A DNA stretch of 64,000 nucleotides from Klebsormidium nitens (Eukaryota > Plantae > Klebsormidiophyceae): assembly GCA_000708835.1 (NCBI GenBank), contig DF237053.1, forward strand, positions 1-64,000, read 5' to 3'. The notes under the pieces were generated by a model that made no database searches, was not told the origin of the DNA, and saw nothing but the letters and a program-made list of their open reading frames with translations. A program made the position numbers and the translations under genes. Numbering within the stretch: the first letter of the stretch is position 1; each line of letters begins with the position of its first letter. Shown here piece by piece: positions 31,110 through 37,650 of the stretch.

Positions 31110-31159
31110 GTGCTTGCACGGCTCACGCGCGCCACGGGTTGTGGCCAAAGGTGCATGAT

Positions 31160-31533
31160 ACACGTCGTCTGACAAGGTCAATAGGGTGGCGTCATCAACT
31201 TGGGTCTCCACCACGTATCTTGTGGCGGGCCCAGAGATGGATGCAGAAATCCACATCGACGGCTGAGGGCTCATCTTTTCCCTCATCCGCAACCAATCAT
31301 CGCGAACTAAAAGATCCGCGGTCGCTGAACTGCGAACAAGCTCCGTGCAGAGTACGGCCCACCCGAAGCCACATGCTTCAAGCTCTTCACATGGCCGCCC
31401 CCGCATTGCGTGGTTCAGGATCCGGATCGCCTTTTTCCAAAATATCTCCGGGCGGTGACATGGCGGAACGGCAAAATATCCGGGTGGTTTACGGCCACAG
31501 AACCGTTGCCCGTGGAGATATTGAGTGCCACGT
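31160..31533 (+). promoter_or_regulatory. Candidate clock/light cis-element cluster upstream of the B-box gene
   Basis: Evening element AAAATATCT at 31439-31447, variant AAAATATCC at 31473-31481 and reverse AGATATT at 31516-31522. ACGT/G-box-like cores at 31160, 31211 and 31527. Confidence 0.5.
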
Positions 31534-31969
31534 ACGCCTGCCCGCGTGAAGTTCAATCGGAACATTTGTGCGGCCAGACTGGGTTGCGTGAGTGGTGACT
31601 CAAACCTTCCAGGACCACACTGGCGATTCTGCGGCTGGCAGGCGAGCTTGCAAGTTGGGCAGGCAGATATGATTCACGAGTCTGACTCTTCTCAGAGTTG
31701 TTCTCTTCCTGGGCGCTGGGAACAGCAGTGCTAGAGAATCTCCGTCCCCTTCAGCTACCCTAGTCCTAGATATCAGAAGCAGAGGCTGCGACCTGGCCAC
31801 AGATGCGGCGATCAGGTTCACTGCTCGACCGTGGCGCTTCTACTTGAACACCTTGGACGTCCTCTTTACATATACCTATCTGGGTTTCCTCTTTGCTCAT
31901 TCACAAACTCCAGCCTCCTACAAGCTCCACCAGCAGCATAGCAGTAGTGCGGCGCTGGGATTAGTCTCC

Positions 31970-33898
31970 ATGGCTATTATGTTCGACGTGTTCCGCCCTG
32001 CGGCGTCGGGCCACCCCGCCGCAGCAGTGGCTCCTTCTTATCTGGCCGCAGTGCGTCCCGAGTCTGAAACAGCCTGCTGCGGACCGTCCACTTCAGGCGC
32101 CTCCAAGCAGTGCGAGCTTTGCCCAAAGGCCGCGCGCGTCTTCTGTGATGCCGACTCCGCTTACCTGTGCTCCGCGTGTGACGTCCGAGTCCACACGGCC
32201 AACTTCCTGGTCTCCCGCCATGTGCGGACGCTGCTGTGTATTGACTGCCAAGGGGAGACGACCTGGCGCGCTTGTGGGGGACGGCCGGGCAAGGAGCACC
32301 ACAGATGCAAGGCTTGCGAGGAGACGGCGAGGCGACTGAAAGCAGATGAGGACCAGTGCGTTCCTTCTGGGGGAGTAGATGCTAGCTGGCTGACGTTGGG
32401 CCCTATTCTGTCGCACCCGCTGCCGAGCAGGGGCGCCGTCGCAGAAGACAGGGCCTCGGGGCGCTGGGGGCGGGACACCGTGCGGGAGGAGCAGGCTGCC
32501 ATCAGTCCCTCAGGGAGCAGTGCGGTGTCGGGCTTGTCAGAGGAGAGGGAGGCTACGGTCACTCCAAGCAGTGTACTCATCGAAGTGCCGCGGGGTGAGA
32601 GGAAGCGGGCGAGGGAGGAGGGAGATGACGGTCCTGTTGCAGCGTCCCATAAACATCAGAAGGTAAGCTTTGGCACTCAAGTATGTTTTGTGATGCTTCC
32701 AGCAAATTGGGCTTCTTTTGCTGTTGTTTGACAGCTGTTCTTTCGAATCGAAAAGTAGCTGGCCCCTTGGTGGAGGATGATGAAGTCTAGCCCTTCTCAT
32801 GGTTGTTGTGCTCCTGCAAAATTGTCTGATGCTGGATCATAAAGAATGCGAGGTTTAAAGAATGCGAGGTACGCTTATGTCTCTTTTGGATGTTCCTTGC
32901 ACCGGGTTTTTTTCTTCCTGCAAGCTTTTTGTTGTACAAAATGGTTAATATTCCAGAATACAAATCGTTTTCAGAAGCTTGGTCTGTGCACTTCTTACCC
33001 AGGAGTTGTGCCCTCTTTCTTGTTGACTTCTCAGTTGACTCCCTTCTTTTTAGATCAAGTATTGAAATTTGAATTTGAGGCTTTTTGTGCGCAAGCTGTT
33101 GCGTGAGCTGTGCTGCCCTGTGCTTAACTTCTGTGATTCAAGATTTACTAGGTTATCTTTCTTTCTTTAAGTACAACTCTTTCTTTCTTTTAAGTACAAT
33201 TCCTTGGCGAGGCCGACTTTTTTTCCATGACGCCCTGTTTACTGTTGACTTACTTGAGATGATTTGATTTTTGTTACCCTCCTTCTGTGTTGTTCGTACT
33301 GCTTAATAGTCATGGTTTGAGCTCTTCAAGAGGTCATGAACAGCTATATTGTAGTCACAGGTTGATTACATGTCCATCAACATGTTCATCAGAGTCCTCT
33401 TAGATTCCTATCTTAGATTCCTATCTCATATCATCCCCCGCATATTTTCAGGTTGATCATGCCCATCGGCCACAAGTCGCAGCACTTCCCCCCCGCCCTC
33501 AGCGCAGCGCCCCTCTCCGGCCAAACACCGAGCCAGCAATGACCAACGCCGCGATTGTCGAGCGGCTCGAACGAACGCTGGCGCGGTGGTACGTCAGCCT
33601 GAACCTGAACAGCCCCGAAACAATCCCACTGTCTATGCACATTTTCCGGAAGGTCCTGCAAAGCCTACAGCCTAACCTGCTGGCAGCAGAAGCGATGAGG
33701 GTGACTCTGGCGGGTTGTCTTTGGTTAGCAACGAAGGTGGACACCGCGCAAGTGAAGGTGCCGAAAGCGTCGGAGGTTGCGGTAGCTGCGGGGGTGCAGG
33801 CGTCGAGGTTGTCAGCTGTTGAGCTGCAACTACTGACCCTCTTGGACTGGAGGTTGTTGGATGGGTGGGTCGGCAGCGGCGAGGTTCTGGATTCATAG
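31970..33898 (+). CDS. Single B-box zinc-finger protein (BBX28/29/32 type) with a C-terminal cyclin-box-like domain. Exons 31970-32662, 33452-33898
   Basis: CELCPKAARVFCDADSAYLCSACDVRVHTANFLVSRHVRTLLCIDCQGETTW is a type-1 B-box with the group V extension. Donor aag|gtaagc and acceptor ttttcag|gtt join in phase 0 into the 33539-33898 ORF. Confidence 0.88.
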
Positions 33899-35386
33899 GC
33901 CTTACCTCTTTGGCGGAGTAAACCTGTGCAGCCAAGGCAGCGGTCTGTTGTTCTAGACAGTCTTGTAGATACTAGATTTGAAGGTTGACGATACACATTG
34001 CTGTACGGAGGCATAGTCGAAGCTCGGATTGGAGCTTGTCAAAAGCCTAAAAGACAATTAAAACAATCGAAACAGTTGCGACACATTCGTTCTTTTATCG
34101 AAAGCTGGGCATATTTGATGTGCCATGGGTTGGGCCTCTCACAAAATGGCAAATTGCCTTCGTGCGAAGTATGATTGAGTAAGTGAATGTTCAACCAATT
34201 CAATCCAGCGAACGATTAATTTTTTCCGCGAATGATTACGCTGCATATGTACATTGCACATACATTTGTCAATAAAAAACCTTGTATATGCTCGCTTATA
34301 TGGCATACTAGTAATAGTCGTTCGCGCGACAGACCTTTCAACCCGGATTGCAAATGCATCCTTAGTAGATTGCAATCGGCGTAGCGTCACTTAATGGCGG
34401 TAGAATAATGTAGCAATGGTGTTCAGATTCATGGTGCGTTCACGCGAGAAGACCATGGTCTTCTTATGGAAAAAAAGTGCACATCCTTCATGAAATTTGT
34501 AATGATGTGAAAGTGGAGAATAATCGTTTCTTGTTGATAGATTAGACACCGATCCGGCCTTCTTTTCAAAGTGTGCAGCTAGTATTCCGAACACGGCCAA
34601 ACGCGACATAATCGGACAAGCTGTTGGCCGGCCGGACAGCAGGCCATGGCACCGGATATAGGTAGGCCATACAAAAATAATCATGTTCCTTTTCTTAAGC
34701 TCGCTAGCGCGCTACAGCAACATTATGCAAGTCCATTTACAGCCGTCCCCTCGGAATCAGCAGTCACAGTATTAGCTATACACACACCACGTTTTACCTT
34801 AGTTTGTGGCCGCATTGAAGGCGATCTGAATAATTGCGGTTACCTAATATGTTCTGCACATGCGCCAATGCTCATGCCAATGTTCGTGTGCACTCCTTGT
34901 GGATAGTTTGGAGCACTAGCTGGATATCAGAACGGATGCACTCCACTACAGAAGGACTGTAGTCACAGGGGTAACCTGACTGACACATCCAAAGACAAGG
35001 CAGAACCTAGCTACATGCGCGCTCTGAGGTGTGAATGCAGGGCTGATCATAATGGTGCTAGCATTAGTAGTGCCTAGTTAGATTCACCACCTCATACCGA
35101 GCAGCTTGTATCAAGTGAAAGTGCTGGATCAGGACAGAATGGCAAGAATGAATGCTCCAATTGTTCACAGCCATATGCTTGTCAACGGACTTGCTGAAAA
35201 CACAGACGCGGTTGTATGGAGCAACCCTCAATCCTAGGTCAACGCAACTCGAAGGAAGGACTCGAAACTGTCCCAGCGGTCCCCACAGTTCCAGATTCGC
35301 TTGTTTATGCAATTCGTATGTTAAATTGTACAGTCTGCAAAAGCACAATAAGGGGGCTCTAGAAAGAGCAATGATCAGCACCCCAT

Positions 35387-37650
35387 CTATGCCTTGGAGA
35401 TGACGTCGTTCAAGATCGATACAACCTTATCGTAGCTCTCCTTGGCCTTCTCTTGGCTCTTTTTCCTGGCAGCGTAGTCAAGCTGCAAGAACAAATTAAG
35501 AAGTTAGCAATGATGAAGTGTCAAGAGACATATTTGCAGAAGTGGCAGGCTGCTTCTGCCTACCGCAGGCATCACTTTGCCGTCTGACCATTGAGATATC
35601 TCTTATAAGTAGCCTGACCTGGCGCCTCATGTCAATTACACCATCCTACTTTTCGTTCTCACGTCTGGGAACAGAGACACACAACTCTCCAATCGTGACG
35701 ACAATGGATGCAGACTCAACCAAGCTCAATGTTTAGGGATTCTGACAATTAGGGTTTAGAACGGCGTTAAAAACAGGTAAGCATGTCAACTCACAGAGTC
35801 GAGCTCGGCGTTCAGAGACTTCTGCAGGGCCTTGATCGCCTTCTTCTCCTCCTTGGACTTGCTGCTAGCAATAGTGTCAATGTCAAAGTTCAGGTACTGA
35901 GCCTCAAGGCGCAGCTGGTTCTGGACAAACGGCCACGCCTTCTTGGCAATGTACTTCTCAGAGTCCTGGATAGCGGCGGCAGAGGCCTTGAGCCGGGCCT
36001 GCGCCCCTGCGACATCCTCGGATTGCAGGAAGAACCGCTGCTTCAGCGGCTGGTCGAGGTCCCGGGCCTCATCGGCATTCTTTGTTCCGGCTGCAGAGCG
36101 AGCAATGGAAGCATTCAGAATTGGTAGACTGTGCAAGACTGTTGCCTCTTTACAGAGTAGACAACCAAACATTACTTGAGCGGTTTGATATTCTGGAATG
36201 TGAAACGTTTGCATGTCCCGCGAACAGGAGAGGAAGGTCTGACGAGACAGGCGCTCCGAGGAAGGCGCAGAGAGGGTTTATTAACACCAAAAACAGCCAG
36301 ATAAGTCTGAGACCCGTTCAAAAATCTTCAATTTCAAAATATGCTCTGTTAGGAACAGGGCCAAAGAAGGTATGACGGCTTGAGTAGGTATTGAACGGCC
36401 AGAATAATGAAGTGGCGGACGCTCTTCCTTATCCAAAATACACTGTTCCCCAATGCCTCACGCATACACAGGCTCCCACCTGCCATGCATTACTCATCTG
36501 TTAAGTTTTCAAATCCATAGGTCCAGACCTTGGGTTTATTGCTAAACTGTTTGACAATATCTTGAAGACTCGCCCAGACATCTGAGTTTCCCCTGGGCTG
36601 CAATTCAACGACACGGCTTCCGCTTTGGCCACAAATGCGTCAGCCACACGTCCAATGCTACAGACTGCAGGCTTCCTAATGTAGAAAGGTCACCGCCCTT
36701 AATCCATTATCCTCTTGGCTTTCTGTGAAGCAGGCCTCTAATGACAATTCCCACACGAGAAAACCAGATTTTTGGTCTTGCAGAATGCCTTGGGAATCAT
36801 CATGTTTCCCCTTCTCTATTTCCCTCCATTGCTGTGCTCCATTGTTCAGTACCACACTAATCATCTTTTAGTCTTGAACTTCTAATTACTTTTGCTTGCA
36901 GCAGTCCCCTGCGAATCCATTATTCGTAGCTGCTGCTTCCTGAGATGCTCATGACAGTACTGTGTCTCCTCACGCATCCCCCATTTGGCAGCTTCGTTCA
37001 GAGGGACAGTGAAGCTGATTGGATGGCATTCACAATGATGGTTTCTCCTTCTCAACCTCGCAGATAGTGGACTGCCGGTCGTACTATCCTGAAATCATAC
37101 CCCCACCTATTCAAATCTACATAGCTACCAAAACAGGGCTAAGCTAGGTTTGAATACCAGCCAGTCAAAGGCAATGCAATCAATGCGGACCAACTCAACA
37201 ACAGACCTTAAGAACTGGCACAACCTTTCCTCTACAGACTTGAGTCTCCTAGTTTGCACTGGAATCAGTTTCCCGTTCCTGACCATCCGCAATAAGGGAC
37301 TGCCATCCTGGTTAGCAATCCAAACCAATGCAATGCACAGGGGCATGAAACTTACGGAGGCCACCGAATGGCTTCGGTGATGGTCCAATCTTAATGGAAG
37401 TGGCCTCTGCGTTCGCCCTCTGCACAGTCCCCACGCTCACGGCAGCCGCTGCTAGCAAGCTGAGCATAGCCCTCCTCGGCACCGCAGCCTCCTCCTTTGC
37501 GCTGGCCCTGACCATCAGAGACTGACCCCTCTTGCTCGACACCGGGACGGCCGCAAACGCGCGGGACGCCTTGGTGGCAGCATTGCCAACCTCGACCTTC
37601 TGGAAGGCAGCAACGGAGGTGGAGGCGCGGGCGACGGTGGAGGAAGCCAT
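35387..37650 (-). CDS. psbQ: Photosystem II oxygen-evolving enhancer protein 3 (PsbQ) with a bipartite chloroplast/thylakoid transit peptide. Exons 37650-37356, 36090-35795, 35482-35387
   Basis: Twin-Arg signal VPRRAMLSLLAAAA...RANA, then IKIGPSPKPFGGLPGTKNADEARD and WPFVQNQLRL...YLNFDIDTIASSK, ending LDYAARKKS...ILNDVISKA*. Phases 1 and 0 join. Confidence 0.97.

What the first reader, a model, noticed from the sequence alone, without database searches (positions are those of the whole stretch)
31970..33898. B-box protein fused to a recognisable cyclin-box domain, possibly revealing the fold of the plant BBX32 C-terminus
Seen: the B-box exon splices in frame (phase 0, strong GT-AG) to an exon encoding ...MHIFRKVL...RVTLAGCLWLATKVDTAQVKVPKASEVAVAAGVQASRLSAVELQLLTLLDWRLLDGW. 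Known: this fits cyclin N-box helices 3-5 (A.ACL+LA.K+EE...P......ME..+L..L.W.L). From recall, Arabidopsis BBX32 ends in an unannotated domain (roughly VFLAAAFWFGVK...VEDVTGVSAGMIRAVESKL...EEGW) that aligns motif by motif (LAGCLWLATK, GVQASRLSAVELQL, DGW). Inference: group V BBX proteins may be ancient B-box-cyclin-fold fusions, with the cyclin signature better preserved in this alga. That would suggest a link from light/clock signalling to a CDK or TFIIB/Rb-like interaction surface.
Basis: partly seen in the sequence, partly recalled or inferred. Interest (0 to 1): 0.82.

Follow-up and report, generated by a model that had tools for sequence, protein, structure and literature searches.

The report
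B-box protein with cyclin-box tail
This alga's gene fuses a B-box zinc finger to a single cyclin-type helical domain, and the same domain is the previously unannotated tail of flowering-plant proteins named BBX32, a family that regulates light responses, flowering and yield.

Summary
In Klebsormidium nitens, exon 1 (31970-32662) encodes a B-box that passes Pfam's threshold. Exon 2 (33452-33898) encodes a domain that passes Pfam's Cyclin_N threshold. Transcript contigs from four studies join the exons at the predicted GT..AG junction. A related species keeps both exons, with dN/dS of 0.04 across the domain.

The predicted structure (pLDDT 91.8) is a five-helix cyclin box. It best matches the first box of cyclins A, B, D and K (Z 14); TFIIB scores 12.

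The exon-2 protein alone finds B-box proteins carrying this domain at their C-terminus in Closterium, Physcomitrium, Diphasiastrum, Ginkgo, Cryptomeria and Picea. Domain-only profiles link it to the C-termini of angiosperm proteins named BBX32 (hhalign 97.5%, E 6e-12). Those C-termini have no Pfam match, yet one of them also models as a cyclin fold.

The main inference is therefore supported for the BBX32 clade. It is not supported for the short, B-box-only group V-like proteins recovered. Arabidopsis BBX32 itself was not examined.

There is only one cyclin box, so this is not a canonical cyclin. CDK or TFIIB-like binding is untested. The two-domain gene model is already public under a wrong name. 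I found no paper linking BBX32 to a cyclin fold.

The parts
31616..34133 (+). Span of the spliced mRNA (5' ends 31616-31675, 3' ends 34105-34133 in four assemblies)
   Evidence: Each of four runs has one contig of about 1.7 kb with the 789-nt GT..AG skip.
31970..32662 (+). Coding exon 1 (231 codons from the first ATG; the public model starts at the second ATG, 31979)
   Evidence: Sequence and ORF. 100% match to public protein P0001. dN/dS is 0.147 against relative L001.
32111..32230 (+). B-box zinc finger (CELC...CDADSAYLCSACDVRVH...H)
   Evidence: Pfam zf-B_box scores 27.8 bits against a cut-off of 24.1. The Cys/Asp/His ligands are invariant in the alignment of 13 full-length relatives.
32237..32317 (+). 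Second Cys4 motif, C-x2-C-x19-C-x2-C, directly after the B-box (P0001 C87, C90, C110, C113)
   Evidence: Invariant in alignments A1 and A2. Also present in angiosperm BBX32-like and B-box-only proteins. Its fold was not tested.
32591..32620 (+). Basic cluster RGERKRAREE in the linker, a possible nuclear localisation signal
   Evidence: Seen in the sequence. Similar K/R clusters occur in relatives' linkers. The role is inferred only.
32663..33451 (+). Intron, 789 nt, GT..AG, phase 0
   Evidence: Skipped in transcript contigs. Not alignable to relative L001, while both exons are about 80% identical. Low GC.
33452..33898 (+). Coding exon 2 (148 codons plus stop)
   Evidence: 92% amino-acid identity to L001.
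33545..33871 (+). Single cyclin-box domain (P0001 residues 260-368). Five helices at 260-277, 285-299, 307-324, 334-341 and 345-358, followed by the DWRLLDGW tail motif.
   Evidence: Pfam Cyclin_N scores 31.4 bits. AF2 pLDDT is 91.8. VIA-align gives Z 14.4 to cyclin A2 residues 201-321, rmsd 2.5 A over 112 residues. dN/dS is 0.039.
33734..33736 (+). Lys323 (LATK) in helix 3, at the position of the conserved cyclin-box Lys
   Evidence: Aligned to the ASK of v-cyclin in the profile alignment. K in all 23 segments of the two groups without moss, lycophyte or seed-plant B-box proteins; N/T in gymnosperms; K/R in 9 of 11 angiosperms.
33821..33823 (+). Glu352 (AVEL) in helix 5, at the position of the conserved cyclin-box Glu
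   Evidence: E in 38 of 40 family members. Aligned to the helix-5 Glu of v-cyclin.

Best explanation
This is a real, expressed, two-exon gene of the streptophyte alga Klebsormidium nitens. Its protein has three parts: an N-terminal B-box zinc finger followed by a Cys4 motif, a roughly 150-residue low-complexity linker with a basic cluster, and a C-terminal single five-helix cyclin box. It is the algal representative of a family found across streptophytes, whose angiosperm members are the proteins named BBX32.

Shown here: the gene structure, its expression, both domains, the cyclin fold, strong purifying selection on the cyclin box, and homology of that box to the unannotated C-terminus of BBX32-type proteins.

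Inferred: like BBX32, the protein has no DNA-binding domain and acts as a transcriptional co-regulator built from two protein-binding modules. Published work on Arabidopsis BBX32 reports that the B-box pairs with other B-box proteins. I propose that the cyclin box is a second docking surface for a partner not yet identified. Candidates are another transcription factor, a kinase of the CDK type, or part of the basal transcription machinery.

Because there is only one cyclin box, it is a cyclin-fold adaptor and not a canonical two-box cyclin.
For: - Gene structure and expression.
- The public 376-aa model already carries PF00643 and PF00134.
- A related species (L001) has the same two exons and the same intron position. 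dS is about 0.62 in both exons, and dN/dS is 0.147 in exon 1 and 0.039 in the cyclin box.
- Fold: pLDDT 91.8 with five helices. Foldseek's top hits are almost all cyclins and TFIIB, TMq 0.6-0.71. In VIA-align the top 45 rows are all cyclin-fold proteins or cyclin-like CDK activators, with cyclin A2/B1/K/D3 at Z about 14, TFIIB 12 and Rb 9.9; the next row scores 5.8.
- The family profile hits TFIIB (1.3e-5), v-cyclin (3.7e-3) and cyclin E1 (0.01) among PDB sequences.
- Family: the domain-only search finds 83 proteins with the domain almost always at the extreme C-terminus. Many have an N-terminal B-box, including Physcomitrium (1e-19), Closterium, Diphasiastrum (8.5e-7), Ginkgo (3e-9), Cryptomeria and Picea.
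- Link to BBX32: for the sequence evidence. Names and accessions are, for example XP_015895718.1, Ziziphus BBX32.
- The Forsythia BBX32 C-terminus models as a cyclin fold: pLDDT 87.3, TFIIB Z 12.9, cyclin A2 Z 12.6.
- Published function: BBX32 is described as a co-regulator that binds BBX21, HY5, BBX4/COL3, BZR1, PIF3 and EMF1. Group V is described as having one B-box and no CCT domain (PMC10442040, PMC7575571).
Against: - No partner of the cyclin box is known, and no binding was tested.
- Nuclear localisation and co-regulator function in the alga are extrapolated from Arabidopsis literature.
- Arabidopsis BBX32 itself was not analysed. The angiosperm proteins carry database-assigned BBX32 names, and no phylogeny against other BBX groups was built.
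- K. nitens against a eudicot BBX32 C-terminus gives no pairwise BLASTP alignment, so that link rests on profiles and intermediate sequences.
- The BBX32 structure model used an alignment that includes the algal sequences.
Confidence: 0.8

Rival explanations
1. It is a working cyclin. The C-terminal box binds and activates a cyclin-dependent kinase, so the B-box targets a CDK to light or clock transcription factors.
For: Pfam Cyclin_N scores above threshold. The best structural matches are the CDK-binding N-terminal boxes of cyclins A, B, D and K. The Lys (helix 3) and Glu (helix 5) that align with the conserved cyclin-box pair are invariant or nearly so in algal members. That this pair contacts the CDK in cyclin A is from my memory of the cyclin A-CDK2 structure literature and was not checked here.
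Against: There is only one cyclin box, and the protein ends 8-18 residues after helix 5. No Cyclin_C hit and no second repeat are present. The Lys is lost in gymnosperms and in some angiosperms. TFIIB and Rb, which bind no CDK, also score highly. No CDK interaction is mentioned for BBX32 in the papers read.
Confidence: 0.1
2. It is a TFIIB-like module. A zinc-binding N-terminus plus a cyclin-fold repeat contacts TBP, RNA polymerase II or promoter complexes, and so competes with or modulates the basal transcription machinery.
For: The family profile's best PDB sequence hit is archaeal TFIIB (E 1.3e-5). One member hits Pfam TFIIB. The angiosperm model's top structural hits are TFIIB, at Z 12.8-12.9, tied with cyclins. 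The zinc module-linker-cyclin fold layout loosely parallels TFIIB.
Against: The zinc module is a B-box, not a zinc ribbon. There is one repeat, not two. The K. nitens domain matches Cyclin_N and not TFIIB in Pfam, and cyclins score above TFIIB structurally (14.4 against 12.6).
Confidence: 0.08
3. The fusion is an artefact: two neighbouring genes, a B-box gene and a small cyclin-like gene, were merged by gene prediction.
For: Prokaryote-style ORF callers split the locus into two ORFs in the relative's contig. An ATG at 33539 opens a free-standing 119-aa ORF.
Against: Single spliced contigs in four independent studies span both exons. The same B-box plus C-terminal domain architecture is found from Closterium to angiosperms.
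Confidence: 0.01

Closest known systems
Angiosperm BBX32 (structure group V B-box proteins; Arabidopsis BBX32/EIP6 and its named orthologs such as Ziziphus XP_015895718.1 and Forsythia KAL2462526.1)
   Same: All have a single N-terminal B-box followed by the same Cys4 motif, no CCT domain, a low-complexity linker, and a homologous C-terminal domain of about 110 residues ending in an (E)EGW-type motif.
   Different: The algal domain still passes Pfam's Cyclin_N threshold and keeps the Lys/Glu pair and the WRPLEGW tail. Angiosperm versions have a shorter helix 2-3 loop and a charged insert before the tail, and they have no Pfam match. Published descriptions treat the BBX32 C-terminus as lacking a known domain.
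Cell-cycle cyclins (Pfam Cyclin_N, PF00134), first cyclin box of cyclin A2/B1/D3/K-cyclin
   Same: Five-helix cyclin box, with Z 14.0-14.4 and rmsd 2.5-2.8 A over 112-114 residues. The Pfam score is above threshold. The Lys and Glu lie at the conserved helix-3 and helix-5 positions.
   Different: There is one box instead of two. It sits at the extreme C-terminus behind a zinc finger. No CDK partner is known. Sequence identity to cyclins is only 13-21%.
TFIIB / Brf core repeats (Pfam TFIIB, PF00382)
   Same: Cyclin-fold repeat with Z 11-13. The family profile hits Pyrococcus TFIIB at E 1.3e-5. A zinc module is N-terminal to the fold.
   Different: The zinc module is a B-box, not a zinc ribbon. 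There is a single repeat. Pfam TFIIB is hit by only 1 of 40 members.
B-box-only short proteins recovered in the same search (CONSTANS-like names; possibly BBX28-31-like, not verified)
   Same: Same B-box plus Cys4 module, scoring up to 122 bits against the family profile with this module alone.
   Different: They have no C-terminal cyclin box, and their scores against the domain HMM are negative.

Membership tests
Cyclin (Pfam Cyclin_N, PF00134) | Score at or above Pfam's gathering threshold | tested here: met
   31.4 bits on exon 2 and 28.6 bits on the full protein, against a cut-off of 23.
Cyclin (Pfam Cyclin_N, PF00134) | Five-helix cyclin-box fold | tested here: met
   The AF2 model has pLDDT 91.8 and five helices. 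Z is 14.4 to cyclin A2's N-terminal box, and the top 45 hits are all cyclin-fold proteins or cyclin-like CDK activators. This is a prediction, not an experimental structure.
Cyclin (functional, CDK-activating) | Two tandem cyclin boxes (N and C) | tested here: not met
   The protein ends 18 residues after helix 5. There is no Cyclin_C hit and no second repeat upstream, where the linker is low complexity.
Cyclin (functional, CDK-activating) | Conserved helix-3 Lys and helix-5 Glu | tested here: met
   K323 and E352 align with the ASK and Glu of v-cyclin. K is found in all 23 segments of the two groups without moss, lycophyte or seed-plant B-box proteins, and E in 38 of 40 family members. Their role in CDK contact is recalled from the literature and was not checked here.
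Cyclin (functional, CDK-activating) | Binds and activates a CDK | not testable with these tools
   No complex prediction or binding assay was available.
BBX structure group V / BBX32 clade | Single N-terminal B-box and no CCT domain | tested here: met
   One zf-B_box hit and no CCT hit on the full protein.
BBX structure group V / BBX32 clade | C-terminal region homologous to that of proteins named BBX32 | tested here: met
   Domain-only HMMs and hhalign (97.5%, E 6e-12) support the match. BLASTP to the Tasmannia BBX32-like C-terminus gives E 8e-10.
BBX structure group V / BBX32 clade | Groups with Arabidopsis BBX32 in a phylogeny of all BBX groups | not tested
   No Arabidopsis sequence and no other BBX groups were retrieved, so orthology rests on shared architecture and on database names.
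TFIIB family (PF00382) | Zinc ribbon plus two TFIIB-type repeats, and a Pfam TFIIB match | tested here: not met
   K. nitens has no TFIIB hit, and only 1 of 40 members has one, at E 0.0012. There is a single repeat, and the zinc module is a B-box.

The most novel reading that the evidence does not exclude
BBX32-type proteins are single-box, non-canonical cyclins, or TFIIB mimics. On this reading the conserved C-terminal cyclin box recruits a CDK (for example a transcriptional CDK) or a basal-machinery component to B-box/HY5/PIF/BZR1 complexes. That would physically link light and clock signalling to kinase or pre-initiation control. The link would date from before land plants, and it would explain how a BBX protein without a DNA-binding or repression domain represses transcription.
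Probability: 0.15. Interest if true: 0.85.

Novelty: new variant of a known kind. Interest (0 to 1): 0.62.

Why it matters
BBX32 is a well-studied regulator of photomorphogenesis, flowering, brassinosteroid cross-talk and high-light acclimation, and expressing the Arabidopsis gene in soybean raised yield (PMC3281879, PMC10442040). Yet the papers I read describe group V BBX proteins only as having one B-box and no CCT domain.

Three results here make the protein's mechanism directly testable. The C-terminus is a structured cyclin-fold domain. It is conserved from Klebsormidium through moss, lycophyte and gymnosperms to angiosperms. In the alga it is under stronger constraint than the B-box. The tests that follow are defined domain boundaries for truncations, two candidate contact residues (the Lys/Glu pair), and a short list of partner classes (CDKs, TFIIB/TBP-type factors, other transcription factors).

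The result also shows that the B-box-cyclin-box architecture predates land plants, and that related cyclin-box tails occur without a B-box in chlorophytes and a liverwort.

One limit on novelty: both Pfam domains are already computed for the public K. nitens protein, and the predicted structures of BBX32 proteins are public. What is new is the connection, not the data.

Tried and rejected
- A single-sequence phmmer search of exon 2 against PDB sequences found nothing. The family profile was needed.
- A word-indexed search with the Cryptomeria C-terminal region returned only close conifer relatives.
- Whole-protein profile scores were rejected as evidence for the C-terminus, because a B-box-only protein of 118 aa scores 122 bits. 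I replaced them with domain-only HMMs and hhalign.
- Pairwise BLASTP of the K. nitens domain against the Forsythia BBX32 C-terminus gave no alignment.
- Foldseek E-values for the small domain were only about 1e-2, so I relied on the consistency of the hit list and on VIA-align Z-scores.
- Holtan 2011, Qi 2012 and Ravindran 2021 could not be read because they are not held. Published mapping of BBX32 interaction regions was therefore taken only from reviews.
- The scan's earlier notes held nothing relevant.
- The two-gene artefact and a chance helical resemblance were considered and rejected.
Full report
**1. What is in the sequence**

The window comes from Klebsormidium nitens. Exon 1 matches a public 376-aa protein of that species at 100%.

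The plus strand carries an ATG at 31970, and a second in-frame ATG at 31979 is the start used by the public model. The open frame runs to 32662 and ends AAG|GTAAGC. A 789-nt AT-rich stretch ends TTTTCAG at 33451. A second open frame runs from 33452 to the stop at 33896-33898. Exon 1 is 693 nt, so the junction is in phase 0. GC content is 0.57-0.67 in the two exons and 0.40-0.47 between them.

Pfam places a B-box in exon 1 (27.8 bits, cut-off 24.1) and Cyclin_N in exon 2 (31.4 bits, cut-off 23, profile positions 48-126 of 127). On the full public protein both still pass, at 26.9 and 28.6 bits, and no CCT domain is found.

**2. Is it one gene?**

Contigs of four sequencing runs from four different studies were laid on 31300-34700. 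Each run has a single contig of about 1.7 kb that covers 31616/31675-32660 and 33450-34105/34133 and skips 789 nt with GT..AG ends. Pieces of the intron appear only at 4-8x depth, against 33-81x for the exons, as expected for pre-mRNA. The runs are only guessed to be RNA, but an exact intron-less join is itself the signature of spliced RNA.

A 54-kb contig of a related species (L001) carries the same arrangement. DNA similarity runs 31140-32697 and 33449-34046 (79-80%) and is lost across the intron. The donor (AAG|GTAAGT) and acceptor (CAG|GTG) sit at the same codon. Synonymous divergence is about 0.62 in both exons. dN/dS is 0.147 in exon 1 and 0.039 over the 119 codons of the cyclin-like part, which is therefore the most constrained part of the protein. 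The two-gene artefact is excluded.

**3. The fold**

An AlphaFold2 model of residues 250-376, built with a 40-sequence family alignment, has mean pLDDT 91.8 and five helices.

- Foldseek's top hits are almost all cyclins (K, E1, A2, B1, D, Pho80, C, T1) and TFIIB, with TMq 0.6-0.71. The E-values are only about 1e-2, as expected for so small a domain.
- An exhaustive structural comparison gives Z 14.0-14.4 for the first cyclin box of cyclin A2 (residues 201-321, rmsd 2.5 A over 112 residues), B1, K-cyclin and D3.
- In the same comparison TFIIB scores 11.9-12.6 and the Rb pocket 9.9. The top 45 rows are all cyclin-fold proteins or cyclin-like CDK activators, and the next row drops to Z 5.8.
- By sequence, the family profile hits archaeal TFIIB (E 1.3e-5), v-cyclin (3.7e-3) and cyclin E1 (0.01) among PDB chains.

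In that alignment K323 (LATK, helix 3) and E352 (AVEL, helix 5) fall on the ASK and the helix-5 Glu of the cyclin. From my memory of the cyclin A-CDK2 work, this is the conserved Lys/Glu pair that contacts the kinase. I did not verify that here.

There is only one box. The protein ends 18 residues after helix 5, and the region upstream is a low-complexity linker.

**4. The family**

The exon-2 protein alone was scored against 1.84 billion representative proteins and found 83 at E<=1e-3. In almost all of them the match lies at the extreme C-terminus, and many carry an N-terminal B-box.

Named members with a B-box include:
- Physcomitrium patens (1e-19)
- Closterium species
- Diphasiastrum complanatum (8.5e-7)
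- Ginkgo biloba (3e-9)
- Cryptomeria japonica (3.4e-5)
- Picea sitchensis (1.6e-4)

Mesotaenium, Marchantia paleacea, the chlorophyte Apatococcus and many unnamed Ala-rich proteins carry the same C-terminal domain without a recognisable B-box or any other Pfam domain.

Full-length alignment shows an invariant B-box, an invariant C-x2-C-x19-C-x2-C motif directly after it, a variable linker, and the conserved C-terminal domain.

**5. The link to BBX32**

A profile of 15 full-length members retrieved angiosperm proteins that NCBI or UniProt name "B-box zinc finger protein 32" or "32-like". They come from Tasmannia, Magnolia, Forsythia, Ziziphus, Linum, Abeliophyllum and Vicia, with unnamed equivalents in Melia, Papaver and Lithospermum.

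Whole-protein scores cannot prove anything about the C-terminus, because a 118-aa B-box-only protein scores 122 bits. I therefore tested the domain alone.

- An HMM of the C-terminal domain, built from 13 non-angiosperm sequences, hits the C-termini of these proteins: Tasmannia 70.6 bits, Magnolia 53.0, then 48.2, 45.0, Forsythia BBX32 43.2, then 41.7 and 40.0, and Ziziphus BBX32 30.3. E-values scaled to 1.84e9 sequences run from 1e-14 to 0.04.
- An HMM built without any moss, lycophyte or seed-plant sequence still finds the right region in ten of them, at 36.5 to 9.6 bits.
- Profile-profile comparison gives 97.5% (E 6e-12) for the non-land-plant group against angiosperm C-termini.
- It gives 99.9% (8e-31) for gymnosperm against angiosperm.
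- It gives 96.8% for the group lacking a B-box against angiosperm.

Pairwise BLASTP of K. nitens against the Tasmannia C-terminus gives E 8e-10, but against the Forsythia one nothing. In derived eudicots the similarity is therefore visible only through profiles.

Short or B-box-only relatives (P0124, P0126-P0129, P0131, P0132) show no trace of the domain.

None of seven angiosperm C-termini has any Pfam hit, even at E 10. Ginkgo (17.9 bits) and Diphasiastrum (20.9 bits) fall just below the Cyclin_N threshold. Twenty-one of 40 family segments hit Cyclin_N at E<=0.01.

A model of the Forsythia BBX32 C-terminus has pLDDT 87.3 and again matches only cyclin-fold proteins at the top: TFIIB Z 12.9 and cyclin A2 Z 12.6. 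Its input alignment included the algal sequences.

Column counts show how the signature erodes:
- The helix-3 Lys is present in all 23 segments of the two groups without moss, lycophyte or seed-plant B-box proteins, is N/T in gymnosperms, and is K/R in 9 of 11 angiosperms.
- The helix-5 Glu is kept in 38 of 40 members.
- The Trp of the WRPLEGW tail is lost in angiosperms, where a charged insert precedes a terminal EEGW/EEGS-AEC motif.

**6. How it most likely works**

Shown: two folded modules separated by a disordered linker with a basic cluster (RGERKRAREE, 32591-32620), no DNA-binding domain, expression as one mRNA, and strong constraint on the cyclin box.

From the literature: BBX32 acts as a co-regulator without known DNA binding. 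It interacts with BBX21, HY5, BBX4/COL3, BZR1, PIF3 and EMF1, and the B-box mediates BBX-BBX pairing (PMC10442040, PMC7575571).

Inferred: the cyclin box is a second docking module that gives the family its specific output. I put about 0.1 on a true CDK partner and about 0.08 on a TFIIB-like contact with the basal machinery. The rest goes to binding of other regulators.

The single box argues against a canonical cyclin. The conserved Lys/Glu pair in algae keeps the CDK idea alive.

**7. Novelty**

The two-domain model of the K. nitens protein is already public, with both Pfam hits precomputed, under the misleading name "C2H2 zinc finger protein".

In the held literature I found no paper connecting BBX proteins with a cyclin or cyclin-like fold:
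- The 15 best-ranked of the 46 papers that hold both "BBX32" and "cyclin" concern gene expression or unrelated topics, judged by title and abstract; the rest were not inspected.
- The two papers holding "B-box", "cyclin-like" and "BBX" are unrelated.
- A 2025 preprint on BBX evolution that includes K. nitens does not mention cyclin.
- A 2026 review does not mention cyclin either.
- A BBX28 study describes group V as having one B-box and no CCT, and found only low-complexity regions in the BBX28 C-terminus.

The connection therefore appears to be undescribed. It could, however, be seen by anyone inspecting public structure predictions, and I could not check InterPro or the AlphaFold DB.

**8. 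Limits**

- Arabidopsis BBX32 itself was not analysed, and no BBX-wide tree was built.
- Both structures are predictions.
- No interaction was tested.

Noticed in passing
window 31669-31734 and 31803-31847; L001 726-875: The 5' UTR holds two upstream ORFs. The first (21 codons, MIHES...LPGRWEQQC) has a counterpart starting at the equivalent place in the related species (MHEL...LPAHWEQQ...). This may be a conserved regulatory uORF.
   Followed up: partly
window 31140-31970: About 830 nt upstream of the start codon (promoter plus 5' UTR) are 79% identical to the related species. That is as conserved as the coding exons, whereas the intron is not alignable.
   Followed up: no
window 32237-32317: An invariant C-x2-C-x19-C-x2-C motif lies directly after the B-box. 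It is shared by all family members and by B-box-only short proteins, and it may be a second zinc site. Pfam's B-box model does not cover it.
   Followed up: partly
window about 35741-36229, minus strand: A PsbQ-like gene (photosystem II subunit family PF05757 in the relative's ORF) lies downstream. It is syntenic with L001 4529-5116, with 73% amino-acid identity by tblastn.
   Followed up: partly
window 32841-32870, about 33155-33200, about 33399-33424: Three small tandem duplications of 13-20 nt lie inside the intron. They were seen by eye in the sequence.
   Followed up: no
P0040 (Apatococcus lobatus), P0033 (Marchantia paleacea), P0006 (Mesotaenium) and many unnamed proteins: The same C-terminal cyclin-box tail occurs without a B-box or any other Pfam domain in a chlorophyte, a liverwort and many Ala-rich unnamed proteins. 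This suggests a wider green-lineage family of proteins that end in a single cyclin box.
   Followed up: partly
P0001 (public protein of this gene): The public name 'C2H2 zinc finger protein' is a misnomer, because the zinc finger is a B-box.
   Followed up: yes
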